Shown: one piece after another, positions 13,787 through 49,459 of the stretch | Layout: each line of letters opens with the position of its first letter | Position numbering within the stretch: position 1 is the stretch's first letter | Assembly: GCA_011109175.1 (NCBI GenBank) | Contig: RDEW01000069.1 | Location: 102,184 to 166,183, forward strand | DNA from: Dicyema japonicum | Lineage: Eukaryota > Animalia > Dicyemida | DNA length: 64,000 nt | Direction of reading: 5' to 3' | Notes under the pieces: model-generated | Told to the model about the DNA's origin: nothing | The model's input: only the letters and a program-made list of their open reading frames with translations | Databases searched by the model: none | Position numbers and translations under genes: made by a program

Positions 13787-14389
13787 TATGCTCACTTATG
13801 GTGCGCACTCCTGGTATTGCAGTGAGGAACGCGAAAAGTGCCTCACCAACTTGAGGAAGGTTCGGCGGCGGGCAATACGGTATTCTATAGGATTGTCTTA
13901 TAGAGCGCCGCTGCCTGAAAGAGGATATCCGGATTTTAAGGACCCGGAGGAAGTAATTAAAAAGATCTTAAAACTAAATTAAAGAAGGAGGTACGGGGAA
14001 GACGAAAGTGATGCCACGAAAACGCTGCCGCAAGGCGGTGAAAGGGTACTTAGTTTGGTTGTAGGAAAAAAAGTCAAGTGGAAAAAAGGTCAAGCGGAAA
14101 AAAAAGTCAAGTCCGTAAGCGGAAAAAAGGTCAAGCGGAAAAAAAAGTCAAGTTGTCTTTTTTTAATTTATATCGCATTTTTGTGATACTACTAGCATCT
14201 TTTAATTTTTAAAAATTTTTTCAATACTTGACTTTTTTTCCGCTTGACTTTTTTTCCCCTTACGGACTTGACTTTTTTTCCGCTTGACCTTTTTTCCGCT
14301 TGACTTTTTTTCCGCACTCCACTTAGTTTAGTTCTTCCCTAATTTCTAACTATTTGTTTTTGCCTAATAAAAATTTTTCCTTCCATTCC
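13787..14389 (+). mobile_element. LINE family A, 5'-truncated 3' fragment ending at an H3 5' UTR (interrupted by a MITE)
   Basis: Matches the ORF2 end (MLTYGAHSWYCSEERE...) and 3' UTR of 40371-44648; tail TTCCTTCCATTCC abuts ATCGATAATTTTCATT upstream of the H3 ATG. Confidence 0.92.
14057..14320. mobile_element. Foldback/Mutator-like MITE, 264 bp, 9-bp TSD ACTTAGTTT
   Basis: Ends GGTTGTAGGAAAAAAAGTCAAG / CTTGACTTTTTTTCCGCACTCC; TSD at 14048-14056 and 14321-14329; TIRs built of (GGAAAAAAAGTCAAG) repeats. Confidence 0.88.
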
Positions 14390-14421
14390 ATCGATAATTT
14401 TCATTCATTCATCGATAAATA

Positions 14422-14547
14422 ATGGCACGAACAAAACAAACTGCTAGAAAATCAACTGGAGCAAAAGTTCCAAGGACGAAAATGGTTCAAAAAGTGAGTA
14501 CCAAAGGATCTAAACGGGCGGCAGTTAAAGTTAGTAGCACAACACGT
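14422..14547 (+). CDS. Chimeric histone head: H3 codons 1-18 + TK + H2B codons 1-22, in frame with family-A ORF1
   Basis: [52 protein letters not shown], read directly from ORF 14422-14961. Confidence 0.93.
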
Positions 14548-15320: not shown

Positions 15321-16791
15321 GGTTGTAGGAAAAAAAGTCAAGTGGAAAAAAGGTCAAGCGGAAAAAAAAGTCAAGTCCGTAAGCGAAAAAAAGTCAAGCG
15401 GAAAAAAAGTCAAGTTGTCTTTTTTTAGTTTATATCGCATTTTTGTGATACTACTAGCATCTTTTAATTTTTAAAAATTTTTTCAATACTTGACTTTTTT
15501 TCCGCTTGACTTTTTTTCCATTTTTGAAAATTTTTCCTTATAAATTTTCGAAATTTAGCGCAAAATGGAAAAAAAGTCAAGTCCGCTAACGAAATTACGG
15601 ACTTGACTTTTTTCCGCTTTGGTATAATCGCTTTGACTAAATCAATTTAAGAACTTCAAGGTAATAATAAAAAAAATATTTTTTATTATAAAATGAATAA
15701 AAATTAAATTAGGGCATCTGAATGGCCATGCTATTTCCCCTAACAATAGCCAACGAGATACGTTCTCGGAACCAACTAGTCTCTCGCAGATCCTTGGTCA
15801 CAGCTTGAATCATGGAGCCGATCTTACGAACCAACTCATCTGCTTGGGGGCCAAGGATTCATAATATAATAAAATTGACTTAACTTTTTTCGCTTTGGTT
15901 TAATCTTTTTGACCTTGACTTTTTTCGCTTTGGTTTAATCTTTTTGACTTAATCAATATACGGATTTTAATTCCTTTGGAAAAAGAATTTCAACAAGAAC
16001 AAATAAAAAACGATTGATACAAAAAAAAAACTTTTAAATATATTTCTGGATCGCCAGGACGGAAAAAAACAGTAGGAGAGGCCCTAAAACCAATTGCATG
16101 GAATATTAAATATTCTTTTGATTCACATTAAATAATCCCTTGATTCACGTTAAATAAAAATCATATGTTTATTTTTTTTAAAGCCTTTTCATGAGAGCCA
16201 TAGTATTTTATAGCTCCGCATAGGCAGGACACACACTTTATTTAAGTAAAGAACAGTTAATTTTAACTAATCGTAGAACCAAGGAATTATCTTCACTTCT
16301 TTTTTTCTTTTTCTTGTGTGAGTGTCCTTTCTAGACAATTTAGTTAAAAGTAGAAAAAATCATTTTTAGAATTTATTTCCACCACGTGTAGTTTTAGTTG
16401 TGGCGAGACATTGTAATTCATTAACATTAGCCAAAATTAACTATTTAAATAATTTGTTATTCTAAACTCGCTTACTTTAAAATGAAACGATCATGAATAA
16501 AAATCTTAATTTATAAACGGAAAAAAAGTCAAGTCCGTAATTTCGTTAACGGACTTAACTTTTTTTCCGTTTTGCGCTAAATTTCGAAAATTTATAAGGG
16601 AAAAATTTTCAAAAATGGAAAAAAAGTCAAGCGGAAAAAAAGTAAAGTATTGAAAAAATTTTTAAAAATTAAAAGATGCTAGTAGTATCACAAAAATGCG
16701 ATATAAACTAAAAAAAGACAACTTGACTTTTTTTCCGCTTGACTTTTTTTCCGCTTGACCTTTTTTCCCCTTGACTTTTTTTCCGCACTCC
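15321..16791. mobile_element. Foldback/Mutator-like non-autonomous DNA transposon, 1471 bp, 9-bp TSD ACTCTGGCT
   Basis: Same termini as 14057-14320; long imperfect repetitive TIRs; TSD at 15312-15320 and 16792-16800. Confidence 0.9.
15680..15861 (-). mobile_element. 5'-truncated CRE-clade element nested in the MULE
   Basis: Reverse strand reads GILGPQADELVRKIGSMIQAVTKDLRETSWFRERISLAIVRGNSMAIQMP*; matches 2915-2960. Confidence 0.8.
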
Positions 16792-20170: not shown

Positions 20171-20184
20171 TTTATTGAAAATTC

Positions 20185-22956
20185 AAATCAAATCAAATCA
20201 AATTTATTCCAAAGTAAGTAAGGAGTCAATTAAAGGGATTTTAACGTGTCCGCCTTTGCGGCCTGGACACTTCACACGTATCCCATCTCCATTGTAGTCG
20301 TCCATTTAGTACGTATTGAGAAGCTGGTTTCCCAACCTTACTTCGATATCTATTTTACCGGCCTGACAAGGCTATTCTCTTCCTCGGAGAGGCTTTCATG
20401 TAATTTCCTCCCCAGAGATATTTTTATCGCCGCTCGCCTTGTTTTCTCCAGGCGAGCGAGAATCCTTTCTCTCGAGGGAGTATAATACCATCCCTCGCAT
20501 CCATATATCAGTCTTGGGAGAATCACAGTTTGGAAGATATAGAGCATTGTATCGGCGTCCAGCATAAGTTTTCTGGAGCAGAACATCGCTTGAACGGCCT
20601 TCTTTCTCCGCTCCTCGATGTCCTTCCGGTACGATCCTCTTCCATCCACTGCAATCCCCAGGTATTTCAGGCTAGAGACTCTCGGTATCCGTAGCGTATA
20701 CATCTCTCTCTGGTGTCGATCCAGCCTGCATATTCGCAAGTAACTGGATTTTTCTGTGGATAGTTTCATCCCTCTCCTATCGCACCATGTCCGAACTCTG
20801 TCGACAAAAGCCCCGATTCGTCGCTCAGAGATGTAGGCCTTCAGAGATGAGTCTAGGATTAAGATGTCATCCGCATAAATCATCAGCTTGGTCCTAACGT
20901 TTTGTGGAGAAGGAAAATCTTCCATAAATACGTTGAATAATAGAGGGCTTAGAATAGACCCTGCGGCACTCCCTTTTAAACAATATATCTTCGGAATATC
21001 TTCCACCAACCACCACGTTTGATATTCCTCCCAGTCAACAGGTTCTTCAGCCATAGGAACATTTGTCTTGAATTTTTGATCGAACCAGTTGACAGAATAG
21101 GCCTCGTGCCATACACTGTCGAAAGCCTTAGATGTCAAGGCAGACAAGGCTCAACTGGCTCCTCTTCTCAAAAGCATTTGCAATCTCATAGTTTAGAGAG
21201 TAATGCAATTACCACACGATCTCCCTGGCCGAAAACCCCATTGGTAACACTGTAGAAAATTAATATTTTCTATGTACTGGTTCAATTTCTTGAAAATAAT
21301 CCGTTCCATAATCTTCGATGTAGAACAGATAAGGCTTATAGGCCTATAACTAAGAGGATCTTTCCTCGACTTTCCAGGTTTAGGAATCATCTTTACAATT
21401 GAGTGCTTCCATAGTGAAGGGGAATGTCCGAGCTTGAAACTTGCGTTATACATCTTTTGTAGAACAGACAGAAATTCATCGGATCCTTCTTTAAACATAG
21501 TCATCGGAATGCTATCAAAACCAGGAGCCTTGTTTTTGCACTCCCGTATAGCAGTCTTGACTTCTGCCAATGTGATTTCCTCTACCATACTATTCAGATC
21601 GTCTATGGAGTAATCCATAGAGCTAGATATATCTTCTGAGAATTTTTCGGATATAATACTGACTGGGTCTACTCCCTGTATGTTTTCTAATTGTTTCCTG
21701 AATACTGACGGTACTCTGTCCAGGGGAATTGTTCTTCCATCTTGATCCGCCAGTACAATGTTCTTTGCTCTCATGTTTTTGTTAGTCAGTCTGGAGTACA
21801 ATTTCCACAAGCAAGGATTCTTAAGTGCACTTTCAAGGCTGCTTTCCTAACTTGGTTTTCTGAATACTACTTCCAAGCTCTCTGTAGAACTTTTTGGATA
21901 GCATCAATATTATTTTTCAAAGTTATACTGTCCCACATGTCCACACATCGTCTGTGCTTCGCCTTCAGAGTATTCCTCTCGCGAATAAGTCCCGAATAGA
22001 AGGAGGGCAGGACTGATTCGTTTTCGGAAGGATTTTTGAGTAAATCTTCTTTGCATATAATCGCAGATACATCGTAATAGTATTGGATAAATCTTGGTTG
22101 AAAGAATCCAACTCATTATGTGTAGAAAAGGAATAATTAATCTTCATTAACATACTCTTCGATAAATAATGACGATAATGTTCCCAGTCTACCGACGAGG
22201 TATCATAATACAGAAAAATGTCTTCAATAATATCCGGTTCAAGATTTATAGTCATCTCCATAGGGATATGGTCACTCCCTATATCCCAGAGTAACCTTGG
22301 CCTGTTTACATGGTCTAGTAGTTGTGGAGATACTAAGGCCAATCCCAGCATATCACCCCCGTAGTATGAGAAATGGTTAGGTTCTTCGGTCGTTAAGACT
22401 TCGACTCCAATTTCCCCGACCAAATCTGCTAGTAGTTGACCGTCCCTGTTGTTTCCATAACATCCATAGGTCCTGTTCTTGGCGTTCAAATATCCCACCA
22501 GGATCGACATTGGGTTTCTTTCGAAGAACTCGACAATTTTCACAGAGGACCAGGCCAAGTCCTTAGAATATAGCCCTCCCACGGTTATCCACGTTCCACC
22601 ACATTGCACGTCGACAGACACGAATTCCGAATCGTCGGCCGATATAATGCAGTCGTTTCGAGTTTGCAATAGTTTATGAAAGAAGATTGAGGTTCCTGTT
22701 CCAGCAACTGCTCCATCTTTCCATGGAATGTCCACTGAGTCATATCCTTCCAGAATATAATGCCTTCCTTCTCGAATCTTCGTCTCGTTGACTACCAAGA
22801 CATCTGCCTTGGCAGTCCTCATAAGTAGTGCTAGTTCATCATGCCTTTTCACCAAGGAGCGAGCATTCACCAGCACTAACTTTAGGATTCTTTTCAGATT
22901 TCTTTTTGGTGGCCCGGGCTCTCCATGGCCAGGTCCACCATTTCCCGTAAATCCAC
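20185..22956 (-). mobile_element. LINE family B (APE-RT), 5'-truncated and degenerate, inserted ~15 nt upstream of the H2A ATG
   Basis: APE (LVNARSL, VVNETK, IGSDHIP), RT (YRPISL, QWGFRPGRSC, KAFDSVWH, ILSPLLFN, YADD); 3' end AATAAA + (TTTGA)4; same orientation as H2A; ~36 bp of target deleted. Confidence 0.9.
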
Positions 22957-27261: not shown

Positions 27262-28878
27262 GTAAGAAGTTTGGACGATTATGAGGACATCTCACGTGTG
27301 GTCTGCGACACAGCGGCCCACGTGGTACAAGGACTCTTCGAAAATAAGCCCTCTATTGGATTATATTTTAGAGGAGTCCGAGGAGTCGAGAAGCTCAGAA
27401 GGGTCGTTCGCGACTCGATCCTTCTGTCGTTCAGAGTCAATATGGGGATCGATGGCAGGGCTGCTTTCCACACTGCAGCGGACATCCCCACACAGCAAGC
27501 GGTTGATCAAGCTGTGCCTGCACCGAGGAGGATGGAGGTTGAGAGCAAGACTCAGCCTCTTGAAATGAATCAAGGACCGAGAACCGAGGGCAGGGCTGAA
27601 TCCGTCACACAGCCGCGGTCCAACAGGCTGTGCCTGCCCTCGACGAAGGAAGACAAGAGGACCGTCTCCCAATGACTGTAGGCTGGACTACAGTAGGGAG
27701 AAAGAGGAAGTCTGCGGTTTCTGCCAAACCGCAGAACGTGCGTGATTCGGGTCCAGAAACCGCAAAGTGCCCTAAAAAGCATTTTGCAGGCTCGAATCAA
27801 TCCAGAGCGCACGTGCCGAAAGAAAAGAAGAAAGAACAGGTATTCGGAGGACTAACTACACTAGTTCGGCTAGAGGTGCCGAAGATGGGAGTGGTTAAAC
27901 TCCTAAGTGGCATAGGTACTCTGGCTACCTATGCGAAAGGAAGGATCGTCAGACGAGGAGAATCCCACTTGTTGGTGGGATTCAGAAATGACGTGGACGC
28001 CTCAGCTTTTGAAGCTGAGGTGAATAAGAAGGTTCCTTTTGGGCCCGGGGCACATAACATGTCTCGGGTCATCCCCAAGGTACACGACTCGATTGTACTA
28101 GTCTTCGGAGTCCTCTGGACTTTGTTGATGAGGATGTACTCGAGTACATCAAAAAGGACTACCCCACGGCGCACAAGATCGAGCGCTTCAAGAGTGGGAG
28201 TCAGAGATTAAGGACTCTCAAGGTCTGGATCAGGTCCGGAGCAGAAGCTGAAAGGATCTGCCTTGAGAAGTTAAAGATAGGTTACTTTAGATTTGGTGTG
28301 GCCCGAGAGCGACCGGTAGCAATCCAGTGCTACAGATGCCAGGGATTCGGCCACACCAGCTCCCGCTGCACTTAATAAAGAGAAGTGCCTAAATTGCGGG
28401 GGTCCACATTCGCGGAAGGCTTGCCAAACAAGTGGCAAGTCTCTCAAGTGCGTGAACTGTGGCGCAAAAGGACACAGGGCGAGCCATACCAAGTGCCCCC
28501 TGTATCAGGAGGCGACGGAGAAGGTACCACAGGGGAGAAGGCAGGCGCCCTCCTCTGGAATGGTCAGTGATGTAGGCACTATCCATCGGATGGTGAGTAA
28601 CTATTGCAATGCCACTGGGGCTTCGCTCCAAACGGCACTTAGGGATATCGCGTTATCTCATAGGTTAAATAATGCGTCGAAGGGATGCTCAACATCGTCT
28701 TCGAAACAGGAGGACTTTAGAATATGACGAAGACTTTTATAAAACGAAGGAGGCACGGGGAAGACGAATGTGATGGCACGAAAACGCTGCCGCAAGGCGG
28801 TGAAAGGGCCTTTAGTTAGTTCTTCCCTAACTTAACATTTGTTTTTTTGCCTAATAAAGATTTTTCCGTTTTTCTTCC
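27262..28878 (+). mobile_element. LINE family A, ORF1-only short form, in H4
   Basis: ORF1 ends ..SKQEDFRI*, then the shared 3' UTR, AATAAA and TTCC tail; H4 restarts at 28879. Confidence 0.92.
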
Positions 28879-32442: not shown

Positions 32443-32532
32443 ATGTCTGGACGTGGTAAAGGTGGAAAAGGAGGAAAGTCAGGTGCAAAGCGATTCAAAA
32501 AGATCCTGATCGATAACATTCAGGGATCACAA
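32443..32532 (+). CDS. H4 head (~30 codons) fused to family-A ORF1
   Basis: Junction ATCACAA|CACATTCCGTACGA as at 47666; in frame after restoring one G in CAGG(G)GATC. Confidence 0.85.
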
Positions 32533-34267
32533 CACATTCCGTACGAAATCTTGAGGATTATCAGGACATCTCACGTGTGGTCTGTGATACAGCGGCCCAC
32601 GTGGTACAAGGACTCTTCGAAAAATAAGCCCTCTATTGGATTATATTTTAGAGGAGTCCGAGGAGTAGAGAAGCTCAGAAGGGTCGTTCGCGACTCGATC
32701 CTTCTGTCGTTCAGAGTCAATATGGGGATCGATGGCAGGGCTGCTTTCCACACTGCAGCGGACATCCCACACAGCAAGCGGTTGATCAAGCTGTGCCTGC
32801 ACCAAGGAGGATGGAGGTTGAGAGCAAGACTCAGCCTCCTGTAATGGATCAAAGGACCGAGGAAAAACATCCCAGCAAAGCTAGCGGTGAACAAGCTGTG
32901 CCTGGGACAAGGAGGATGGAGGTTGAGGGCAAGACTCAGCCTCTTGAAATGAATCAAGGACGAGAACCGAGGGCAAGGGCTGAATCCGTCACACAGCCAA
33001 GCGGTCCAAACAGGCTGTGCCTGCCCTCGACGAAGTGCGACAAGAGGACCATCTCCCAATGACTGTAGGCTGGACTACAGTAGGGAGAAAGAGGAAGTCT
33101 GCGGTTTCTGCCAAACCGCAGAACGTGCGTGATTCGGGTCCAGAAAACCGCAAAGTGCCCTAAAAGCATTTTTGCAGGCTCGAATCAATCCAGAGCGCAC
33201 GTGCCGAAAGAAAAGAAGAAAGAACAGGTATTCGGAGGACTAACTACACTAGTTCGGCTAGAGGTGCCGAAGATGGGAGTGGTTAAACTCCTAAGTGGCA
33301 TAGGTACTCTGGCTACCTATGCGAAAGAAGGATCGTCAGACGAGGAGAATCCCACTTGTTGGTGGGATTCAGAAATGACGTGGACGCCTCAGCTTTTGAA
33401 GCTGAGGTGAATAAGAAGGTTCCTTTTGGGCCCGGGGCACATAACATGTCTCGGGTCATCCCCAAGGTACACGACTCGATTGTACTAGTCTTCCGGAGTC
33501 CCTCTGGACTTTGTTGATGAGGATGTACTCGGAGTACATCAAAAGGACTACCCCACGGCGCACAAGATCGAGCGCTTCAAGAGTGGAGTCAGAGACTAAG
33601 GACTCTCAAGGTCTGGATCAGGTCCGGAGCGGAAGCTGAGAGGATCTGCCTTGAGAAGTTTAAGATAGGTTACTTTAGATTTGGTGTGGCCCGAGAGCGA
33701 CCGGTAGCAATCCAGTGCTACAGATGCCAGGGATTCGGCCACACCAGCTCCCGCTGCACTTATAAAGAGAAGTGCCTAAATTGCGGGGTCCACATTCGCG
33801 AAGGCTTGCCAAACAAGTGGCAAGTCTCTTCAAGTGCGTGAACTGTGGCGCAGAAGGACACAGGGCGAGCCATACCAAGTGCCCCCCTGTATCAGGAGGC
33901 GACGGAGAAGGTACCACAGGGGAGAAGGCAGGCGCCCTCCTCTGGAATGGCCAGTGATGTAGGCACTATCCATCGGATGGTGAGTAACTATTGCAATGCC
34001 ACTGGGGCTTCGCTCCAAACGGCACTTAGGGATATCGCGTTTATCTCATAGGTTAAATAATGCGTCGAAGGGATGCTCAACAATCGTCTTCGAAACAGGA
34101 GGACTTTAGAATATGACGAAGACTTTTATAAAACGAAGGAGGCACGGGGAAGACGAATGTGATGGCACGAAACGCTGCCGCAAGGCGGTGAAAGGGCCTT
34201 TAGTTAGTTCTTCCCTGATTACTTAACATTTGTTTTTTGCCTAATAAAGATTTTTCCGTTCCGATCC
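32533..34267 (+). mobile_element. LINE family A, ORF1-only short form, in H4
   Basis: Same structure as 27262-28878; tail TTCCGTTCCGATCC. Confidence 0.92.
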
Positions 34268-36999: not shown

Positions 37000-37161
37000 T
37001 TTATTGAAAATTTTGAATTTTTTCGTACTTATGTTTTTAAATTGTGCTTCCGGAAAAAACTTTTAAATTAGCATAAGAAAATCAATACTTTCTAAAGTTT
37101 ATTCTGGAAGCACAATTTGAAAACATAAGTACGAAAAAATTCAAAATTTTTGATTTAGACT

Positions 37162-37529
37162 ATGGTTCAAAAAGTTAGCACAAAAGGATCTAAAAGGCTG
37201 CAGTTAAAGTTAGTAGCACAACACGTGCCTTACGAAAAAAGAAAAAGCGATCCCAAAACTATCATTTGTACATTCTGAGGATTTTGAAATCTGTCCACAC
37301 TGATTTGGGGATGTCAAAGAAAGCTATGATGGCTATGGACAGCTTTACTTTTGACATTTACGAAAAAATCAAGAACGAAGCTTGCAATCTAGTTCAGCAT
37401 AATAGCAAAGCTACTATCACATCAAGAGAAATTCAAACAGCAGTACGCTTGATTTTGCCTGGAGAATTGGCAAAGCATGCTATTACCGAAGGGGCAAAGG
37501 CGGTCACCAAGTATACCAATACTAAGTGA
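37162..37529 (+). CDS. H2B: Histone H2B (1-bp indel near codon 12)
   Basis: Matches intact copies. Confidence 0.92.
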
Positions 37530-37822
37530 TTTTTACTTGATATAATAAAGAAAACTTGTTTTCTAACCATTTTTTTCCTTACATAAAAATAGCCCACGTG
37601 TCATAATCTTAACAAAAGAATGTTTTTTATTAATTTTAACGCAATAAGAACGTTTTTTATTATTTTAACGCTATTTAAAAAGTCCGTTTTAGTGTGTTTT
37701 CCAATTTTCACTTTAATATCGATTTGTGCTTCCGTGAAAAACTTTTAATATTATCGATTTGTGCTTCGGCGAAAAATTTTTGCGTCGTCAATTTATAAAC
37801 GCCAAATTTGGAGCGCAAAGCA

Positions 37823-38131
37823 ATGTCTGGACGTGGTAAAGGTGGAAAAGGAGGAAAGTCAGGTGCAAAGCGATTCAAAAAGATCCTGATCGATAACATT
37901 CAGGGGATCACAAAGCCTGCAATTAGGAGACTGTGTCGTAGAGGAGGTGTGAGAAGGATCTCAGGCAAAATTTATGAGGAGACAAGATGTGTCCTCAGGA
38001 TCTTTATTGAGAGAACTATAAGAGATTGCATTTCCTATTGTGAACACGCTAAAAGAAAAACTGTGATTGCTATGGATGTGGTCTATGCCTTGAAGAGACA
38101 AGGGAGAACAATATATGGATTTGGTGGATGA
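37823..38131 (+). CDS. H4: Histone H4
   Basis: Intact ORF. Confidence 0.98.
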
Positions 38132-38460
38132 CTTTTTTTAATAAAAAAATAAATTTTTATCTATATTAAATTCTGAGATATAAATTAAGTCGTTTTAGGG
38201 TTACAAGAAGCTTTCTATAAATAGTGTTTTTTATGAATTCTAAATACACAGTGATAATTTTAAAATTTTGTAAAATAGCTTTTTTCTACTTTAATGTGGT
38301 AAAATTTTGCTTAAAATAATGCTTTGATAATTTTAAAAAAAATTGTGTTTTGATAATTTTCCAAATTGTGCTTCCGGAAAAAAATTACTTGCTCTCTCGT
38401 ATTGTTGCAAAATTGCGTGTGCTTCCGCGAAAAATTTAAGCGTACGTTAGTATTAATACA

Positions 38461-38541
38461 AAATTTTTGATTTAGACTATGGTTCAAAAAGTTAGCACTA
38501 AAGGATCTAAACGGGCTGCAGTTAAAGTTAGTAGCACAACA
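38461..38541 (+). other. Ectopic H2B 5' UTR plus first 21 codons placed just after the H3 TATA-like box
   Basis: ...TATTAATACA|AAATTTTTGATTTAGACTATGGTTCAAAAAG matches H2B at 37143-37220. Confidence 0.92.
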
Positions 38542-40302
38542 AGTTCCGTAAGAAGTTTGGACGATTACCAGGACATCTCACGTGTGGTCTGTGATACAGC
38601 GGCCCACGTGGTAAATGGACTCTTCGAAAATAAGCCCTCTATTGGATTATATTTTAGAGGAGTCCGAGGAGTCGAGAAGCTCAGAAGGGTCGTTCGCGAC
38701 TCGATCCTTCTGTCGTTCAGAGTCAATATGGGGATCGATGGCAGGGCTGCTTTCCACGCTGCAGCGGACATCCCCACACAGCAAGCGGTTGATCAAGCTG
38801 TGCCTGCACCGAGGAGGATGGAGGTTGAGAGCAAGACTCAGCCTCCTATAATGGATCAAGGGACATGGAAAAAGACCAGGCCTACTTCATACACATCAGA
38901 GGACATCCCCACACAGCAAGCGGTTGAACAAGCTGTGCCTGCACCGAGGAGGATGGAGGTTGAGAGCAAGACTCAGCCTCTTGAAATGAATCAAGGACCG
39001 AGAACCGAGGGCAGGGCTGAATCCGTCACACAGCCAGCGGTCCAACAGGCTGTGCCTGCCCTCGACGAAGTGCGACAAGAGGACCATCTCCCAATGACTG
39101 TAGGCTGGACTACAGTAGGGAGAAAGAGGAAGTCTGCGGTTTCTGCCAAACCGCAGAACGTGCGTGATTCGGGTCCAGAAACCGCAAAGTGCCCTAAAAA
39201 GCATTTTGCAGGCTCGAATCAATCCAGAGCGCACGTGCCGAAAGAAAAGAAGAAAGAACAGGTATTCGGAGGACTAACTACACTAGTTCGGCTAGAGGTG
39301 CCGAAGATGGGAGTGGTTAAACTCCTAAGTGGCATAGGTACACTGGCTACCTATGCGAAAGGAAGGATCGTCAGACGAGGAGAATCCCACTTGTTGGTGG
39401 GATTCAGAAATGACGTGGACGCCTCAGCTTTTGAAGCTGAGGTGAATAAGAAGGTTCCTTTTGGGCCCGGGGCACATAACATGTCTCGGGTCATCCCCAA
39501 GGTACACGACTCGATTGTACTAGTCTTCGGAGTCCCTCTGGACTTTGTTGATGAGGATGTACTCGAGTACATCAAAAAGGACTACCCACGGCGCACAAGA
39601 TCGAGCGCTTCAAGAGTGGGAGTCAGAGACTAAGGACTCTCAAGGTCTGGATCAGGTCCGGAGCAGAAGCTGAAAGGATCTGCCTTGAGAAGTTAAAGAT
39701 AGGTTACTTTAGATTTGGTGTGGCCCGAGAGCGACCGGTAGCAATCCAGTGCTACAGATGCCAGGGATTCGGCCACACCAGCTCCCGCTGCACTTATAAA
39801 GAGAAGTGCCTAAATTGCGGGGGTCCACATTCGCGGAAGACTTGCCAAACAAGTGGCAAGTCTCTCAAGTGCGTGAACTGTGGCGCGGAGGGACACAGGG
39901 CGAGCCATACCAAGTGCCCCCTGTATCAGGAGGCGACGGAGAAGGTACCACAGGGGAGAAGGCAGGCGCCCTCCTCTGGAGTGGTCAGTGATGTAGGCAC
40001 TATCCATCGGATGGTGAGTAACTATTGCAATGCCACTGGGGCTTCGCTCCAAACGGCACTTAGGGATATAGCGTTATCTCATAGGTTAAATAATGCGTCG
40101 AAGGGATGCTCAACATCGTCTTCGGAACAGGAGGACTTTAGAATATGACGAAGACTTTTATAAAACGAAGGAGGCACGGGGAAGACGAATGTGATGGCAC
40201 GAAAACGCTGCCGCAAGGCGGTGAAAGGGCCTTTAGTTAGTTCTTCCCTGATTACTTAACATTTGTTTTTTTGCCTAATAAAGATTTTTCCGTTCCGTTC
40301 CG
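38542..40302 (+). mobile_element. LINE family A, ORF1-only short form, H2B-headed
   Basis: ORF 38479-39633 fused in frame; tail TTCCGTTCCGTTCCG. Confidence 0.92.
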
Positions 40303-40309
40303 TTAGACT

Positions 40310-41938
40310 ATGGTTCAAAAAGTTAGCACAAAAGGATCTAAACGGGCTGCAGTTAAAGTTAGTAGCACAAAAAGTTCCGTAAGAAGTTTGGACGATTACC
40401 AGGACATCTCACGTGTGGTCTGTGATACAGCGGCCCACGTGGTAAATGGACTCTTCGAAAATAAGCCCTCTATTGGATTATATTTTAGAGGAGTCCGAGG
40501 AGTCGAGAAGCTCAGAAGGGTCGTTCGCGACTCGATCCTTCTGTCCTTCCGAATAAACATGGGGATCGATGGCAGGGCTGCTTTCCACGCTGCAGCGGAC
40601 ATCCCCACACAGCAAGCGGTTGATCAAGCTGTGCCTGCACCGAGGAGGATGGAGGTTGAGAGCAAGACTCAGCCTCCTATAATGGATCAAGGGAAATGGA
40701 AAAAGACCAGGCCTACTTCATACACATCAGAGGACATCCCCGCACAGCTAGCGGTTGAACAAGCTGTGCCTGGGACGAGGAGGATGGAGGTTGAGAGCAA
40801 GACTCAGCCTCTTGAAATGAATCAAGGACCGAGAACAGAGGGCAGGGTTGAATCCGTCACACAGCCAGCGGTCCAACAGGCTGTGCCTGCCCTCGACGAA
40901 GGAAAACAAGAGGACCGTCTCCCGATGACTGTAGGCTGGACTACAGTAGGGAGAAAGAGGAAGTCTGCGGTTTCTGCCAAACCGCAGAACGTGCGTGATT
41001 CGGGTCCAGAAACCGCAAAGTGCCCTAAAAAGCATTTTGCAGGCTCGAATCAATCCAGAGCGCACGTGCCGAAAGAAAAGAAGAAAGAACAGGTATTCGG
41101 AGGGCTAACTACACTAGTTCGGCTAGAGGTGCCGAAGATGGGAGTGGTTAAACTCCTAAGTGGCATAAGTAGTCTGGCTACCTATGCGAAAGGAAGGGTC
41201 GTCAGACGAGGAGAATCCCACTTGTTGGTGGGATTCAGAAATGACGTGGACGCCTCAGCTTTTGAAGCTGAGGTGAATAAGAAGGTTCCTTTGGGCCCGG
41301 GGCACATAACATGTCTCGGGGTCATCCCCAAGGTACACGACTCGATTGTACTAGTCTTCGGAGTCCCTCTGGACTTTGTTGATGAGGATGTACTCGAGTA
41401 CATCAAAAAGGACTACCCCACGGCGCACAAGATCGAGCGCTTCAAGAGTGGGAGTCAGAGACTAAGGACTCTCAAGGTCTGGATCAGGTCCGGAGCAGAA
41501 GCTGAGAGGATCTGCCTTGAGAAGTTAAAGATAGGTTACTTTAGATTTGGTGTGGCCCGAGAGCGACCGGTAGCAATCCAGTGCTACAGATGCCAGGGAT
41601 TCGGCCACACCAGCTCCCGCTGCACTTATAAAGAGAAGTGCCTAAATTGCGGGGGTCCACATTCACGGAAGGCCTGTCAATCCAGAGTCAGGTCTCTCAA
41701 GTGCGTGAACTGTGGCTTGGAGGGACACAGGGCGAGCCATACCAAGTGCCCCCTGTATCAGGAGGCGACGGAGAAGGTACCACAGGGGAGAAGGCAGGCG
41801 CCCTCCTCTGGAGTGGTCAGTGATGTAAGCGCTGTCCACCGCGTGGTAAGTCGATACTGTAGCAGCACAGGTTCAACGTTCCCTAATGCGCTTAGGGACA
41901 TTGCGCTCTGCGATAGGAAGGTAAGTGCGGCGAAGTGA
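40310..41938 (+). CDS. H2B-head::ORF1 fusion protein (542 aa, gag-like, three CCHC zinc knuckles)
   Basis: [32 protein letters not shown]...CYRCQGFGHTSSRC, CLNCGGPHSRKAC, CVNCGLEGHRASHTKC. Confidence 0.93.
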   Translation: MVQKVSTKGSKRAAVKVSSTKSSVRSLDDYQDISRVVCDTAAHVVNGLFENKPSIGLYFRGVRGVEKLRRVVRDSILLSFRINMGIDGRAAFHAAADIPTQQAVDQAVPAPRRMEVESKTQPPIMDQGKWKKTRPTSYTSEDIPAQLAVEQAVPGTRRMEVESKTQPLEMNQGPRTEGRVESVTQPAVQQAVPALDEGKQEDRLPMTVGWTTVGRKRKSAVSAKPQNVRDSGPETAKCPKKHFAGSNQSRAHVPKEKKKEQVFGGLTTLVRLEVPKMGVVKLLSGISSLATYAKGRVVRRGESHLLVGFRNDVDASAFEAEVNKKVPLGPGHITCLGVIPKVHDSIVLVFGVPLDFVDEDVLEYIKKDYPTAHKIERFKSGSQRLRTLKVWIRSGAEAERICLEKLKIGYFRFGVARERPVAIQCYRCQGFGHTSSRCTYKEKCLNCGGPHSRKACQSRVRSLKCVNCGLEGHRASHTKCPLYQEATEKVPQGRRQAPSSGVVSDVSAVHRVVSRYCSSTGSTFPNALRDIALCDRKVSAAK

Positions 41939-44519
41939 TGTTACGCATCATTTCAGTTAATGTTAGGTCCCTCCGGAGAAGAAGGAAGGCCATCGAGGAT
42001 CTTCTGGACTCTTTGGAGGTGGACATCTTGGTCCTTAACGAGACCAAGAGTAAGGATACGGCTGCTGCAGGCTTTAAAGGCTATACTAGTTGTCATCTCT
42101 TGTGGAATGACACACATAGAGGTTCGGGCACTAGTATCTATTGGAGGACGAGTCTAGCAGCAGTCGTCCAAGGTATTGCAAATTGTCCTCATTGCGAGCT
42201 AATATTATTACGAATCAGGTTATCTGGCTTTAGCGTTGTTATAGGGGCAATGTATGCCAAGCAGTTGTGGTTGTGTAAGGACCACATTAAAACTGTATTT
42301 GACATTCATCCCCATTGCGTTATTTTTGGTGATCTGAATGCTAAGCATTCAGATTTTGGCTGTTTTGTTAATAATAGGGCTGGATCAGCACTCCGGGAAT
42401 TAGCTTGGAATCTTGGGCTCTCAGTCACTACATCGACGGACCCCAATCACAAAGATACACGAGGAGGAGAGGACTTCTTGGGTATGGCCGTAGCCTCCCC
42501 TTCATTAATTGGTATGCTCTCTGTACCTCGTGTTCTTAGGGACATCGGAAGCGATCACCGTCCCCTACTCACTGAGCTTCACGAACCTGTTCGACCTCAG
42601 GCCCCAATTGGCTATGACTTGGGCTCTGGCACTTGGGATAACCTGGAGTCGTTCATGGATAGAAAACTCCCTTCTCTCAAAGGGCAAGTTTGTAGTGAAG
42701 CGGACGTGGAGGAATTGGATGCCACCCTGGGTGGTATCCTCGAGGAATACATGCGGACTAACTTCCGGTTACGTCCGCAAGGTGGAGGCTCCGCACGAAT
42801 TCCAGGCCTGATTTTAAGTAAGATAACACTTAGAAAGAGGTACCTGCGGTTCAAAGCGAGGAGCACGTATGAAGAGAACCGGATCTTCTACCAGAAGAAG
42901 GTAAACACCTTACGAAGGGAAATCCGGAAGGCGCTTGTTGACTATCAGAGCAACAAATGGAGGAGGGCCTGCGAGAGGGTGAACCCCGCATGGCCGGACT
43001 TCTGGAGTCAGCTGAAGCGCCTGTCGGGCAGAGGGGAAGAGTCATCTGCGCGTACCCTGTGTCGTGCGGACGGTTCTAAAACCTCTGACCCGACTGAAAT
43101 AGCGAGCATCTTTGCAGGTAGCTTTAGGGCAGTTACTGCAGTTCGACCAGAGAACTTTGTCGAGTTAACAGCTCGACAAAGTATAGAGGACGTCATCTCT
43201 GCGGAGAGACGGAAGTTGAGCCACTCTCGGGAGATCCCGAAGGTGGCATGCATCACCGAGGAGGAGGTCCGGGCCGCGATAAGTAAATCGAAGAACAACG
43301 CACCGGGCCAAGACAAGATCCCCATGGCCCTTTTCAAGAAAGGACCTGGAAGTCTCGTGAACACCTTGGTAAGATTGTACAACGGTAGTACAGGTTGGGT
43401 TACGTTCCTAGGCGTTGGAAGGAAGCGGAACTGGTTTTTGTAAGGAAACCAGGAAAACCTCCTGAAGACCCTAGTAGCTACCGCCCTATAAGCTTGTTAC
43501 CTGCCGTTGCTAAAATCTTAGAGAGAGTGATACACCAGAGGTTAACCCAGGAATGCATAATAAAAGACACCCTCTCGGACCTTCAGATGGGATTCCGTGA
43601 GGGGCGTTCCTGTGGGGACTGCCTCTGGAGGTTGAGCTCTCAGATTCGTGAAAGGAGCAAGAAGCAATGCACAGCCGCGTTGTTCCTGGATGTGGAGAGG
43701 GCGTTCGACTCGGTCTGGCATGACGGCCTCCGTTGCGCCCTCGCAGAAGGAGGAATATCTCTGGAGCTAAGGAGCTGGTTATCAAGCTTCTTAGAGGATC
43801 GGATGAACTATGTAAGGCATAAAGGTTGCCGATCTAGTTTGTTTAGATCTAACCGGGGAGTTCCACAAGGGTCGGTTTTGAGCCCCACCCTTTTCAACGT
43901 TTACATGTCTACACTTCCCCACCCAGCCAATGTGAGGACGGAGATGGCTATCTATGCGGACGACATAGTACTCTGGGATCACTCGTGGAAACCAGATGTA
44001 GCGTGTCGGAGGATTCAAGTAGCTGTCAATGAAATCATACGCTGGTGTGGGAGCAGAGGACTTAGGCTGAGACCTGAGAAATGTAAGTTATTAGTTTTTG
44101 GCCGCCCTAAGCGGTCTAATAATTTAATACCTAGAGTAACCATCTATGGGGTACCTATAGAGGTTACTGGGCGGACGAGCTACCTTGGAGTGACATTCAA
44201 CTCCAAGTGTAGTTTCCAGGAGCACACCGCCCTCGTTAAGAGGCGGGCTGTGCAAAGATTAGGAGCGTTGAGGGCTTTTCAGCTGAGTCGCGATGCCTGG
44301 GCCAAAGTGTTCAACGCCATGGTGCTGCCTATGCTCACCTATGGTGCGCACTCCTGGTATTGTAGTGAGGAACGCGAAAAGTGCCTCACCAACTTGAGGA
44401 AGGTTCGGCGGCGGGCAATACGGTATTCTATAGGATTGTCTTATAGAGCGCCGCTGCCCGAAAGAGGATATCCGATTTCAGGACCCGAGGAAGTGATTAA
44501 AAAGATCTTAAAAAATTAA
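41938..44519 (+). CDS. ORF2: AP endonuclease + reverse transcriptase (Jockey/I-group-like; no RNase H seen); 1-bp indels near 43390 and 44475
   Basis: ISVNVRSL, LVLNETK, GDLNAKH, IGSDHRP; YRPISLL, QMGFREGRSC, DVERAFDSVWH, GVPQGSVLSPTLFN, YADD, YLGVTF. Starts by a TGATG overlap with the ORF1 stop. Confidence 0.95.
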
Positions 44520-44557
44520 AGAAGGAGGCACGGGGAAGACGAATGGATGCACGAAAA

Positions 44558-44575
44558 CGCTGCCGCAAGGCGGTG
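44558..44575 (+). other. 3' UTR hairpin of family A (CGCTGCC-GCAA-GGCGGTG, GNRA loop)
   Basis: 7-bp stem with two G-U pairs; conserved in nearly all family-A 3' ends. Confidence 0.6.
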
Positions 44576-44675
44576 AAAGGGCCTTAGTTAGTTCTTCCCT
44601 ATTACTTAACATTTGTTTTTTGCCTAATAAAGATTTTTCCTTCCTTTCAATCGATAATTTTCATTTTCATTAATA

Positions 44676-45086
44676 ATGGCACGAACAAAACAAACTGCTA
44701 GAAAATCAACTGGAGCAAAAGTTCCAAGGAAACAGCTTTCTGCTAAATCTGCACGCAAGTCAGTTTCTCAATTGGGTGGTGTAAAGAAACCACATCGCTT
44801 TCGTCCTGGTGTCGTGGCAATGAGGGAGATCAGAAGATATCAAAAGAGTACTGACCTTCTATTGCGAAAGACACCGTTCCAAAGGGTTGTTAGAGAAGCA
44901 GCACAATTTATGAAGACAGATTTACGTTTCCAATCATCGGCCATTGTTGCTCTTCAGGAGGCTGCAGAGACTTATTTGGTCGGGATTTTTGAGGATAGTA
45001 ATTTGTGTGCAATACATGGAAAACGAGTAACAATAATGCCACAGGATATGCACCTAGCAAGGAGAATTCGTGGTGAAAAAACATAA
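44676..45086 (+). CDS. H3: Histone H3 (intact, downstream of element)
   Basis: 136-aa ORF. Confidence 0.97.
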
Positions 45087-46721: not shown

Positions 46722-46916
46722 TTTATTGAAAATTTTGAATTTTTTCGTACTTATGTTTTTAAATTGTGCTTCCGGAAAAAACTTTTAGAATTAGCATAAG
46801 AAAATCAATACTTTCTAAAGTTTATTCTGGAAGCACAATTTGAAAACATATAAGTACGAAAAAATTCAAAATTTTCGATTTCAGACTATTTTGATTTGAT
46901 TGAATTTTCGAAGACT

Positions 46917-47575: not shown

Positions 47576-47666
47576 ATGTCAGGACGTGGTAAAGGTGGAA
47601 AAGGAGGAAAGTCAGGTGCAAAGCGATTCAAAAAGATCCTGATCGATAACATTCAGGGGATCACAA
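47576..47666 (+). CDS. H4 head (30 codons) fused in frame to family-A ORF1
   Basis: ...[24 protein letters not shown] in ORF 47561-47854. Confidence 0.92.
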
Positions 47667-49404
47667 CACATTCCGTACGAAATCTTGAGGATTATGAGGA
47701 CATCTCACGTGTGGTCTGCGACACAGCGGCCCACGTGGTACAAGGACTCTTCGAAAATAAGCCCTCTATTGGATTATATTTTAGAGGAGTCCGAGGAGTA
47801 GAGAAGCTCAGAAGGGTCGTTTCGCGACTCGATCCTTCTGTCATTCAGAGTTAATATGGGGATCGATGGCAGGGCTGCTTTCCACACTGCAGCGGACATC
47901 CCCACACAGCAAGCGGTTGATCAAGCTGTGCCTGCACCGAGGAGGAGGATGGAGGTTGAGAGCAAGACTCAGCCTCCTGTAATGGATCCAAGGACCGAGG
48001 AAAACATCCCAGCACAGCTAGCGGTTGAACAAGCTGTGCCTGGGACGAGGAGGATGGATGTTGAGAGCAAGACTCAGCCTCTTGAAAAGAATCAAGGACC
48101 GAGAACCGAGGGCAGGGCTGAATCCGTCACACAACCAGCGGTCCAACAGGCTGTGCCTGCCCTCGACGAAGTGCGACAAGAGGACCATCTCCCGATGACT
48201 GTAGGCTGGACTACAGTAGGGAGAAAGAGGAAGTCTGCGGTTTCTGCCAAACCGCAGAACGTGCGTGATTCGGGTCCAGAAACCGCAAAGTGCCCTAAAA
48301 GCATTTTTGCAGGCTCGAATCAATCCAGAGCGCACGTGCCGAAAGAAAAGAAGAAAGAACAGGTATTCGGAGGACTAACTACACTAGTTCGGCTAGAGGT
48401 GCCGAAGATGGGAGTGGTTAAACTCCTAAGTGGCATAGGTACACTGGCTACCTATGCGAAAGAAGGATCGTCAGACGAGGAGAATCCCACTTGTTGGTGG
48501 GATTCAGAAATGACGTGGACGCCTCAGCTTTTGAAGCTGAGGTGAATAAGAAGGTTCCTTTTGGGCCCGGGGCACATAACATGTCTCGGGTCATCCCCAA
48601 GGTACACGACTCGATTGTACTAGTCTTCGGAGTCCCTCTGGACTTTGTTGATGAGGATGTACTCGAGTACATCAAAAAGGACTACCCCACGGCGCACAAG
48701 ATCGAGCGCTTCAAGAGTGGGAGTCAGAGACTAAGGACTCTCAAGGTCTGGATCAGGTCCGGAGCGGAAGCTGAGAGGATCTGCCTTGAGAAGTTAAAGA
48801 TAGGTTACTTTAGATTTGGTGTGGCCCGAGAGCGACCGGTAGCAATCCAGTGCTACAGATGCCAGGGATTCGGCCACACCAGCTCCCGCTGCACTTATAA
48901 AGAGAAGTGCCTAAATTGCGGGGGTCCACATTCGCGGAAGGCTTGCCAAACAAGTGGCAAGTCTCTCAAATGCGTGAACTGTGGCGCAGAAGGACACAGG
49001 GCGAGCCATACCAAGTGCCCCCTGTATCAGGAGGCGACGGAGAAGGTACCACAGGGGAGAAGGCAGGCGCCCTCCTCTGGAATGGTCAGTGATGTAGGCA
49101 CTATCCATCGGATGGTGAGTAACTATTGCAATGCCACTGGGGCTTCGCTCCAAACGGCACTTAGGGATATCGCGTTATCTCATAGGTTAAATAATGCGTC
49201 GAAGGGATGCTCAACATCGTCTTCGAAACAGGAGGACTTTAGAATATGACGAAGACTTTTATAAAACGAAGGAGGCACGGGGAAGACGAATGTGATGGCA
49301 CGAAAAACGCTGCGCAAGGCGGTGAAAGGGCCTTTAGTTAGTTCTTCCCTGATTACTTAACATTTGTTTTTTGCCTAATAAAGATTTTTCCATTCCATTT
49401 TTCC
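47667..49404 (+). mobile_element. LINE family A, ORF1-only short form, in H4
   Basis: Tail TTCCATTCCATTTTTCC joins GCGAAAAA, 55 nt upstream of the H4 ATG. Confidence 0.92.
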
Positions 49405-49459
49405 GCGAAAAACCTTTTGCGTCGTCAATTTATAAACGCCAAATTTGGAGCGCAAAGCA

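What the first reader, a model, noticed from the sequence alone, without database searches (positions are those of the whole stretch)
38461..38541. An H2B 5' end carried into an H3 promoter: direct sign of 5' transduction from a histone promoter
Seen: immediately after the H3 TATTAATA box the sequence switches to CAAAATTTTTGATTTAGACTATGG..., the H2B 5' UTR (cf. 37143) starting at its TCA initiator-like site. It continues through 21 H2B codons and then the element. About 12 bp of H3 target are missing between the two junctions. Inference: the element RNA began at an H2B transcription start and was reverse-transcribed completely, so donor copies are co-transcribed from histone promoters.
Basis: partly seen in the sequence, partly recalled or inferred. 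Interest (0 to 1): 0.85.

Follow-up and report, generated by a model that had tools for sequence, protein, structure and literature searches.

The report
Histone H2B leader carried by LINE
A jumping gene (LINE retrotransposon) that lives in a tandem histone-gene array carries the start of an H2B gene as its own front end, and one copy has landed with that H2B front end just behind an H3 gene's TATA box, so the histone leader travels with the element's RNA; whether that RNA began exactly at the H2B transcription start could not be tested.

Summary
Observation confirmed. At 38459/38461 the H3 promoter (TATTAATAC) switches to the H2B 5'UTR, ATG and 21 codons, then LINE ORF1. H3 resumes at 44649 with 11-12 bp lost.

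The insert is two elements. el1 (38542-40302) is an ORF1-only derivative. el2 (40303-44648) is near full length (CCHC ORF1, APE, RT) and has its own H2B leader starting 12 nt later.

Interpretation partly supported.
- Two coherent junctions 12 bp apart, at a recurrent H3 insertion site, fit retrotransposition better than recombination or misassembly.
- The leader is not a one-off transduction. Every 5'-complete copy has it, and H4-inserted copies keep its last codons.
- The leaders stay within 0-1 mismatch in 63 nt of current H2B alleles, two different alleles on two 5' subfamilies. This implies continuing exchange with H2B genes or mRNA.
- No donor copy inside an H2B gene is in the window.
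- The cap site could not be mapped, and the junction was not confirmed by independent reads.
- Leader starts differ between copies (-19, -7, -5 from the ATG).

3' junctions of two LINE families lie 19-22 bp after the TATA-like box in all four histone promoters.

Closest precedent: Drosophila R1 transcripts carrying upstream 28S sequence to non-28S sites. An earlier scan note reports an H3 plus H2B-like double leader on another piece of this genome.

The parts
38132..38460 (+). H3 promoter of unit 4, intact up to and including the TATA-like box TATTAATA (38451-38458). It holds two copies of the shared histone promoter motif GTGCTTCCGCGAAAAA.
   Evidence: Aligns at 97-98.6% with the H3 promoters of four other units up to 38460. 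Sequence.
38459..38460 (+). 5' junction. The CA dinucleotide is shared by the H3 promoter (TAC A TCG) and the H2B leader (TTC A AAA), giving a 2-nt microhomology.
   Evidence: Direct comparison of the intact H3 promoter, native H2B and the focal sequence.
38461..38541 (+). H2B leader 1: 5'UTR from -19/-18, ATG at 38479 and codons 1-21, fused in frame to ORF1.
   Evidence: 0 mismatches to 37143-37181. 1 of 63 coding mismatches to the unit-3 allele. ORF 38479-39633.
38542..40302 (+). el1, an ORF1-only non-autonomous derivative. It has the ORF1 body, 55 nt, a 137-nt 3'UTR with AATAAA, and a (TTCCG)3 tail. ORF2 is removed right after the ORF1 stop.
   Evidence: 38472-40108 matches 40303-41940, and 40164-40300 matches 44518-44648. 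98.4% identical to the H4-inserted copy at 27262-28877 and 93.4% to el2.
40303..40372 (+). H2B leader 2: starts at TTAGACT (-7), then ATG 40310 and codons 1-21. It directly follows the el1 tail.
   Evidence: 0 of 63 coding mismatches to the unit-3 H2B allele.
40373..44648 (+). el2, a near full-length LINE. ORF1 runs to 41938 (CCHC knuckles). ORF2 starts in a UGAUG overlap at 41938 and holds APE and RT. It carries a one-base indel near 43389 relative to the copy at about 59300. The tail is TTCC-type repeats.
   Evidence: Pfam zf-CCHC_6, Exo_endo_phos and RVT_1 (E=1.4e-40). Indel and ORF junction.
44649..45086 (+). H3 5'UTR (from AATCGATAA, 21 bp after the first T of the H3 TATA box in intact units) and the H3 coding sequence. 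This gene is now 6.2 kb from its promoter.
   Evidence: H3 Pfam Histone E=6e-42.
37142..37223 (+). Native H2B 5'UTR and codons 1-21 of the same unit. This is the allele type matching leader 1. This gene copy has a one-base deletion at 37196.
   Evidence: In one search, table 4, reads show the extra base in about half of the depth.
14388..14544 (+). Second, independent case. The tail of another element is followed by the H3 5'UTR from +22, then 18-19 H3 codons, then an H2B leader from -5 (the other H2B allele type), then ORF1. All parts are in frame.
   Evidence: ORF 14422-14961.
32443..32540 (+). H4-inserted copy (the same junction is at 47576-47674). H4 up to codon 30 is joined through a CACAA microhomology to the last H2B-derived codons of the element. 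A complete H4 follows the tail from 9 nt before the ATG.

Best explanation
The window is a tandem array of divergent core-histone units, ordered H2A(-), H2B, H4, H3, colonised by an APE-type LINE.

**What is shown**
- The family's 5' end is an H2B leader: a 5'UTR of up to 19 nt, the ATG and 21 codons. This leader gives ORF1 its start codon.

**What is inferred**
- An element RNA carrying this leader was inserted by target-primed reverse transcription into the H3 gene of unit 4.
- The bottom strand was nicked 21 bp after the H3 TATA box, which is the recurrent H3 site.
- The cDNA was copied to within the H2B 5'UTR.
- Its end was joined 12 bp upstream through a CA microhomology, just after the TATA box. 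The H2B ATG now sits 28 bp after the H3 TATA, about as far as the H4 ATG (29 bp) and the H2A ATG (32 bp) lie from their own boxes.
- Most likely the full-length el2 arrived first. The ORF1-only el1 then nested 21 bp after the same TATA box, inside the leader, and duplicated about 70 nt of it. The H4 and H3 insertions in the window duplicate 70-150 bp in the same way.
- The leader is kept almost identical to living H2B alleles because elements repeatedly sit in H2B genes or copy from them. The propagating RNA is therefore read from histone promoters and not from a promoter of the element's own.
For: - **Two-junction geometry.** The insert is flanked by the H3 promoter up to 38460 and by H3 from 44649, with 11-12 bp lost.
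- **The same H3 site was used independently.** At 14388 another element's tail joins H3 one nucleotide away.
- **Element identity.** CCHC ORF1, APE and RT. AATAAA plus a TTCCG-type repeat tail.
- **The leader occurs at non-H2B sites more than once.**
  - 38461 and 40303.
  - 14482, behind an H3 head.
  - H4-inserted copies start inside the H2B-derived codons, with CACAACAC.TTCCGTACGAAA against native CACAACACGTGCCTTACGAAA.
- **Leaders track native alleles.**
  - Leader 2 has 0 of 63 and leader 1 has 1 of 63 differences from the GTT-AGC-ACA-GCT allele of units 3 and 4.
  - The 14482 leader has 1 of 63 differences from a GTG-AGT-ACT-GCG allele found on a contig of assembly GCA_000949405.1.
  - The element bodies behind these leaders differ by 7-10%.
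- **3' junction offsets from the first T of the TATA-like box**:
  - H4: +20.
  - H3: +21 and +22.
  - el1 within the leader behind the H3 TATA: +21.
  - Second LINE family in H2A: +19.
- **el1 is a different subfamily from el2.** It is 93.4% identical to el2 and 98.4% to an H4-inserted copy. The pair is therefore not a local tandem duplication.
- **The element is transcribed.** One run shows an RNA-like profile, with coding depth of 1e4-1e5 against 30-230 in spacers. There the element has depth 400-1300, although it is about 10 times rarer than spacers in the DNA-like run.
- **Precedent.** Drosophila melanogaster-type R1 transcripts carry 6-27 nt of upstream 28S sequence, detected at non-28S insertions (PMC2718515).
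Against: - None of the six native H2B genes in the window has an element at codon 21. The only hint is one low-depth read joint, 37237 to 38732.
- The H2B cap site is unknown.
- The three leaders begin at different positions (-19, -7, -5). None is proven to be a complete RNA 5' end.
- The start of leader 1 lies 16-18 bp after the H2B TATA-like box, 1-3 nt from where a second LINE family inserts in H2A and in H2B. It may reflect a nick site and not a start site.
- Allele tracking could also come from gene conversion with neighbouring H2B genes. Each leader matches the allele type of its nearest unit.
- The 38460/38461 joint has no independent read support.
Confidence: 0.6

Rival explanations
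1. The leader is refreshed at the RNA level without any donor in an H2B gene. During reverse transcription the enzyme switches, by homology in the H2B-derived 5' end of the element RNA, onto abundant polyadenylated H2B mRNA. It then copies that mRNA to its cap.
For: - No H2B-resident donor is in the window.
- Leaders match current H2B alleles.
- H2B-like sequence extends past codon 21 and could guide a homologous switch.
- The histone genes here have AATAAA and no stem-loop, so their mRNAs would be polyadenylated and usable templates.
- Non-LTR reverse transcriptases are known to jump between templates (discussed in PMC2718515).
Against: - It does not explain why insertions sit so precisely behind histone TATA boxes.
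- Co-transcription is simpler, given that copies do sit directly behind histone promoters.
- Leader starts differ by 12-14 nt, whereas copying to one cap site should give one start.
Confidence: 0.18
2. The H2B leader is an old, fixed part of the element with no present link to H2B promoters. Its near-identity to local H2B alleles comes from DNA gene conversion within the array. The start of the leader is where 5' truncation or microhomology happened to join it.
For: - Every 5'-complete copy has the leader.
- H2B-like sequence fades gradually after codon 21.
- Each leader matches the allele type of the nearest H2B gene, and leader 1's UTR is identical to the gene 1.3 kb upstream.
- Leader starts vary.
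Against: - Conversion tracts would have to fit within about 80 bp of homology, and do so repeatedly.
- The element has no visible promoter of its own upstream of the leader.
- Copies are found almost only in sense orientation directly behind histone TATA boxes.
Confidence: 0.15
3. DNA rearrangement or assembly chimera: the H3 promoter was joined to an H2B-resident element by a deletion, by unequal crossover, or by a mis-join of long reads in a repetitive array.
For: - The array is highly repetitive, and most units have an intact H3 promoter beyond 38460.
- No bridging read was listed.
Against: - The far end of the insert returns to the same H3 promoter only 12 bp downstream, at a site used by an independent insertion.
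- A deletion or mis-join would leave H2B or H4 sequence after the element, not H3.
- The 5' join has the microhomology typical of LINE 5' junctions.
Confidence: 0.05

Closest known systems
R1 elements of the Drosophila melanogaster group (site-specific APE LINE in 28S rDNA)
   Same: This is a site-specific LINE read through from the host gene. Its transcripts keep 6-27 nt of upstream target sequence. That sequence is recognised because it appears at insertions outside the normal target, and it helps form precise 5' junctions. R1 insertions carry small target deletions (9 bp) or duplications (PMC2718515).
   Different: - The host gene here is a Pol II protein-coding histone gene.
- The carried leader is about 82 nt and supplies the 5'UTR, the start codon and 21 codons, in frame with ORF1.
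- All four histone genes are used as targets.
- Membership of the R1 clade was not tested.
5' transduction by human L1 and SVA, for example the SVA subfamily carrying MAST2 exon 1
   Same: A host 5' sequence transcribed from an upstream host promoter becomes the 5' end of new copies. It can then define a propagating subfamily (PMC6139936).
   Different: - Those cases arise by read-in or splicing at random loci and are non-coding.
- Here the leader is the start of the element's own ORF1.
- Both source and targets are one gene family, hit at a fixed promoter-proximal position.
R2 and the SLACS/CZAR/CRE elements (host-promoter-dependent site-specific LINEs)
   Same: They have no promoter of their own, insert in sense orientation in a multicopy gene, and are expressed as a co-transcript. 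This rests on established knowledge. R2 co-transcription and its 5' ribozyme appear in PMC3414825, listed.
   Different: - Those elements have a restriction-like endonuclease.
- R2 trims the host leader with a ribozyme. No ribozyme or other Rfam family was found here.
- None of them uses the host start codon.
R9 of bdelloid rotifers
   Same: [quoted passage not shown] This is comparable to the 70-150 bp duplications of histone 5' ends seen here in H4, H3 and the leader.
   Different: R9 is an R2-like element in rDNA. The focal insertion itself has a 12-bp deletion, not a duplication.
HAL1-type ORF1-only LINE derivatives
   Same: el1 and the H4-inserted copies keep ORF1 and the 3' end and lack ORF2 exactly. 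They occur with several different junctions, so they form a propagating non-autonomous lineage. The comparison with HAL1 is from general knowledge.
   Different: They are unrelated in sequence and are restricted here to histone promoters.

Membership tests
LINE 5' transduction (read-in from an upstream host promoter) | Non-element host sequence lies between the 5' target junction and the element body, inside the insertion boundaries | tested here: met
   The H2B leader 38461-38541 lies between the H3 promoter junction and ORF1. The insertion is closed at 44648/44649.
LINE 5' transduction (read-in from an upstream host promoter) | The extra sequence matches an identifiable source locus | tested here: met
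   A 39-mer is identical to native H2B 37143-37181, with 0 expected by chance. Coding mismatches to H2B alleles are 0-1 of 63.
LINE 5' transduction (read-in from an upstream host promoter) | A donor element sits directly downstream of that source sequence in its native place | tested here: inconclusive
   None of the six H2B genes in the window carries an element. One low-depth read joint, 37237 to 38732, hints at an H2B-resident copy elsewhere.
LINE 5' transduction (read-in from an upstream host promoter) | The carried segment begins at the host promoter's transcription start | not testable with these tools
   There are no cap-selected data. RNA-like unitigs break at allele differences. Leader starts are at -19, -7 and -5.
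Site-specific non-LTR retrotransposon co-transcribed with its target (R1/R2/SLACS type) | Recurrent sense-strand insertion at the same position of a multicopy gene | tested here: met
   3' junctions lie at +20 (H4, units 2 and 3, plus read joints), at +21 and +22 (H3, two events) and at +21 (nested el1), counted from the TATA-like box.
Site-specific non-LTR retrotransposon co-transcribed with its target (R1/R2/SLACS type) | Endonuclease plus reverse transcriptase ORF2 and a defined 3' tail | tested here: met
   Pfam Exo_endo_phos 1.4e-13 and RVT_1 1.4e-40. TTCCG-type repeat tail after AATAAA.
Site-specific non-LTR retrotransposon co-transcribed with its target (R1/R2/SLACS type) | The element lacks its own promoter and is expressed from the host promoter | not tested
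   This is only inferred. The leader starts after the TATA-like box, and copies sit right behind histone TATA boxes.
R1 clade of APE LINEs | RT/APE phylogenetic placement with R1, TRAS, SART and related elements | not tested
   No reference clade sequences were available. The best database relatives are about 35% identical unnamed animal ORF2 proteins. The UGAUG overlap of ORF1 and ORF2 resembles SART1, from memory only.
5' self-cleaving ribozyme-processed LINE (R2-like) | An HDV-like or other ribozyme at the 5' end | tested here: not met
   No Rfam match at the gathering threshold in the whole window, nor at E<=1 in 38300-41000.

The most novel reading that the evidence does not exclude
This is a LINE family with no promoter and no start codon of its own. 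It is aimed, by distance from the TATA box and not by local sequence, at the start region of all four core-histone genes. A position about 20 bp downstream of TATA would fit recognition of the transcription initiation complex or of its opening DNA.

The element would propagate only as a histone::ORF1 fusion transcript. Its expression would then be tied to histone (S-phase) transcription, and its ORF1 protein would carry a histone H2B tail.
Probability: 0.3. Interest if true: 0.85.

Novelty: new variant of a known kind. Interest (0 to 1): 0.65.

Why it matters
Site-specific LINEs are known in rRNA, snRNA, tRNA, spliced-leader and telomeric repeats. My literature searches found none reported in histone genes.

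- **New target class.** This would be a family specialised on Pol II histone promoters.
- **Borrowed coding start.** The family takes the host's 5'UTR, start codon and N-terminal codons.
- **Key evidence.** The H2B leader at an H3 site shows that the leader belongs to the mobile RNA. The same logic established target-derived leaders in R1 transcripts.
- **Mechanism made testable.** The regular 19-22 bp offset from TATA boxes gives a concrete hypothesis for how a LINE could be aimed at transcription start regions.
- **Effect on the host.** These insertions cut many units of a very high-copy histone array off from their promoters.

Tried and rejected
- **Read support.**
  - They show the majority intact-H3 form at 38460 and several other element junctions. 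No contig bridging 38460/38461 was listed, and none defined an H2B start.
  - A back-calculation of the RNA-like run's depth in 37067-37183 suggested coverage starting near 37155-37162. I reject this as evidence, because unitigs break at the allele differences in the first 60 nt of H2B.
- **Census of leader types through protein databases.**
  - ORF1 searches, whole and for region 245-470, found no close relatives.
  - The APE part found nothing at 1e-10.
  - Exact look-ups of H3 and both ORF1 forms were not on record.
  - H2B, H4 and H2A were found only on one 2.2-kb contig of GCA_000949405.1.
- **Clade assignment.** PDB sequence searches and the atlas search gave only generic RT and APE matches. 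The representative search found about 35% identical unnamed animal ORF2 proteins.
- **Ribozyme at the 5' end.** None was found.
- **Selection for in-frame heads.** Three of four heterologous junctions are in frame: two H4 types and H3::H2B. The unit-6 H4 junction is not. The chance probability is about 0.11, so I do not claim selection.
- **Target-derived or RNA-carried H4 heads.** There are too few variant sites to tell.
- **A single DNA deletion as the origin.** Rejected on geometry.
- **Literature.** Searches for histone-specific LINEs found nothing relevant.

Full report
**Setting**

The window holds at least six tandem units of about 3.5 kb. Each carries H2A on the minus strand, then H2B, H4 and H3 (ORFs, Pfam, self-alignment).
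- The histones are unusually divergent.
- The genes have AATAAA shortly after their stop codons.
- No histone stem-loop, nor any other Rfam family, was detected.
- A near-identical unit lies on contig DF945167.1 of assembly GCA_000949405.1. One paper lists that assembly as Vollenhovia emeryi (PMC10591384).

Almost every unit carries a retrotransposon insertion just upstream of, or early in, a histone gene, in the sense orientation.

**The observation**

- The H3 promoter of unit 4 runs to TATTAATAC (C at 38459).
- From 38460 the sequence is identical over 39 nt to the native H2B 5'UTR and first codons at 37143-37181. No such match is expected by chance.
- It continues through the H2B ATG (38479) and 21 codons to 38541, then runs in frame into a 384-codon ORF.
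- H3 sequence resumes at 44649. Four intact H3 promoters show that ATCGCAGAAAAA (11-12 bp, depending on how the shared A is counted) is missing.
- CA at 38459-38460 is shared by both partners.

**What the insert is**

It is two elements.
- *el2 (40303-44648)* has a 542-codon ORF1 with CCHC knuckles. ORF2 starts in a UGAUG overlap and carries APE and RT domains. ORF2 has a one-base indel near 43389 relative to another copy.
- Its 3' end has AATAAA followed by short TTCC(G/A/T) repeats.
- *el1 (38542-40302)* has the same ORF1 and 3' end but lacks ORF2 exactly. It belongs to a non-autonomous ORF1-only lineage also found inside the H4 genes of units 2, 3 and 5.
- el1 is 98.4% identical to the unit-2 copy but only 93.4% to el2. 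The pair is therefore not a local duplication.
- el2 has its own H2B leader. It starts 12 nt later (TTAGACT, -7 from the ATG), right after the el1 tail.

**Does the leader travel with the element?**

Yes, on present evidence.
1. The insert returns to the same H3 promoter 12 bp downstream of where it left. A deletion, a crossover or a mis-join would not do this.
2. The 3' junction (AATCGATAA) is one nucleotide from the junction of an independent element tail at 14388.
3. The copy at 14388-14544 shows the same thing a second time. An H2B leader (from -5) sits behind 18-19 H3 codons and an H3 5'UTR, all in frame with ORF1.
4. The H4-inserted copies begin inside the last H2B-derived codons and are joined to H4 through a CACAA microhomology.

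**One-off transduction or standing feature?**

It is a standing feature that is kept fresh.
- All 5'-complete copies have the leader.
- H2B-like sequence continues weakly for about six codons past codon 21 in every lineage.
- The first 63 coding bases are almost identical to living H2B alleles.
  - Leader 2 has 0 and leader 1 has 1 difference from the allele of units 3 and 4.
  - The 14482 leader has 1 difference from a different allele (GTG AGT ACT ... GCG), present on the GCA_000949405.1 contig.
- All four differences between the two kinds of leader fall on sites that are polymorphic among native genes. Three of the four show the native states.
- The ORF1 bodies behind the leaders differ by 7-10%. 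The copy at 14482 is a mosaic: its first 870 nt are 90% identical to el2 and the following 1.8 kb are 99.4% identical.

The leaders therefore exchange with H2B genes or H2B mRNA. Three routes remain open:
- passage through H2B genes with co-transcription;
- template switching onto H2B mRNA;
- gene conversion with neighbouring genes.

**Is the leader's first base the H2B start site?**

This could not be tested.
- The run with an RNA-like profile gives no usable 5' boundary.
- The three leaders start at -19, -7 and -5.

A regularity did emerge when counting from the first T of each TATA-like box to the first retained target base after an element tail:

| Site | Offset |
|---|---|
| H4 (units 2 and 3; also in read joints of two runs) | +20 |
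| H3 (two events) | +21 and +22 |
| A second, unrelated LINE family with a (GATTT)n tail, before H2A | +19 |

- A tail-only remnant with a 19-bp duplication in the H2B 5'UTR of unit 5 looks like a further insertion of that second family at the equivalent position.
- The nested el1 sits at +21 from the H3 TATA box although the local sequence there is H2B 5'UTR. This favours a rule based on distance from the promoter, and it favours el2 arriving first with el1 nesting later.
- Leader 1 starts at +16 to +18 in the H2B promoter, 1-3 nt from that site.
- The H4 ATG lies only 29 bp after its TATA box. The H4 start must therefore be closer than the usual 30 bp, which is compatible with a start near +20.
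- The data fit the idea that nick site and start site nearly coincide. They fit equally well the idea that the leader's start marks a nick site.

Other 3' junctions fall on the shared promoter motif GTGCTTCCGCG, which resembles the TTCCG tail repeat. Examples are unit 5 at 49401 and a read joint to 38422.

**Mechanism proposed**

*Shown:*
- the anatomy, junctions and domains;
- allele matching of the leaders;
- the recurrent offsets;
- transcription of the element relative to the spacers.

*Inferred:*
- TPRT at a nick about 20 bp after the histone TATA box;
- the top-strand break either 70-150 bp downstream, which duplicates the histone 5' end and leaves a complete histone gene after the element, or a few bp upstream, as in the focal case;
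- 5' joining by microhomology or by annealing of the leader;
- transcription of the new copy from the captured histone promoter. In the focal copy the H2B ATG lies 28 bp after the H3 TATA box.

**Comparison with known systems**

- The closest parallel is Drosophila R1. Its melanogaster-type transcripts carry 6-27 nt of upstream 28S sequence, recognised at non-28S insertions (PMC2718515).
- L1 and SVA 5' transduction (PMC6139936) and the host-promoter-dependent R2 and SLACS elements share parts of the logic.
- R9 shares the long duplication.

New here are the histone (Pol II, protein-coding) target, the use of all four histone genes, and the borrowed start codon and N-terminal codons.

**Limits**

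- Only one 64-kb window was available.
- There are no bridging reads and no cap data.
- No census or clade phylogeny could be made.

Noticed in passing
window 20184-22956 (minus strand): A second, unrelated LINE (APE and RT, with an AATAAA plus (GATTT)n tail) sits directly before the H2A gene of unit 1. Its 3' junction is 13 nt before the ATG, 19 bp after the TATA-like box. It has no histone leader, and 36 bp of the promoter are deleted.
   Followed up: partly
window 46880-46916: The H2B 5'UTR of unit 5 contains a 14-nt TTTTGATTTGATTG stretch flanked by a 19-bp duplication of the UTR. It looks like a tail-only insertion of the second LINE family, at the position equivalent to its H2A site.
   Followed up: partly
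window 15321-16790 and 14056-14321: A foldback or MITE-like DNA element has ends rich in AAAAAGTCAAGCGG repeats and 7-9 bp target duplications. A 1.47-kb copy is inserted in ORF1 of one LINE copy, and a 266-bp copy is in the 3'UTR of another. A contig of the RNA-like run joins element position 39348 to it.
   Followed up: no
whole window; L001: The core histones are divergent, and each gene has AATAAA soon after its stop. Rfam finds no histone 3' stem-loop anywhere in the window. In the RNA-like run, depth falls to spacer level soon beyond each coding region. A near-identical unit is on a 2.2-kb contig of GCA_000949405.1. The array has very high depth in the reads.
   Followed up: partly
window 37196: The H2B gene of unit 4 has a one-base deletion that breaks the frame after codon 11. 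About half of the read depth at this place carries the extra base.
   Followed up: partly
window 27262-28877, 32541-34267, 47675-49400, 38542-40302: There is an ORF1-only non-autonomous lineage with ORF2 removed right after the ORF1 stop. Its copies show three different H4 junction types. One type (H4 GATCGATAA joined at 38547) is also present in a run labelled as another organism.
   Followed up: partly
window 14482-18623: This is a mosaic copy. The first 870 nt of ORF1 are 90% identical to el2, and the following 1.8 kb are 99.4% identical. This suggests that 5' modules are exchanged between lineages.
   Followed up: no
window 49385-49420; read joint to 38422: Some 3' junctions fall on the shared histone promoter motif GTGCTTCCGCGAAAAA. 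Its TTCCG core equals the element's tail repeat, so tail-to-target pairing may help priming.
   Followed up: no
window 41935-41940: The ORF1 stop and the ORF2 start overlap as UGAUG. This arrangement is associated with termination-reinitiation in some insect LINEs (from memory, SART1).
   Followed up: no
window 38762-38996 and 40593-40827: ORF1 contains an internal repeat of about 100 nt (89-94% identical) with a period of about 135 nt. Read depth from the RNA-like run drops to zero over 38588-38938.
   Followed up: no
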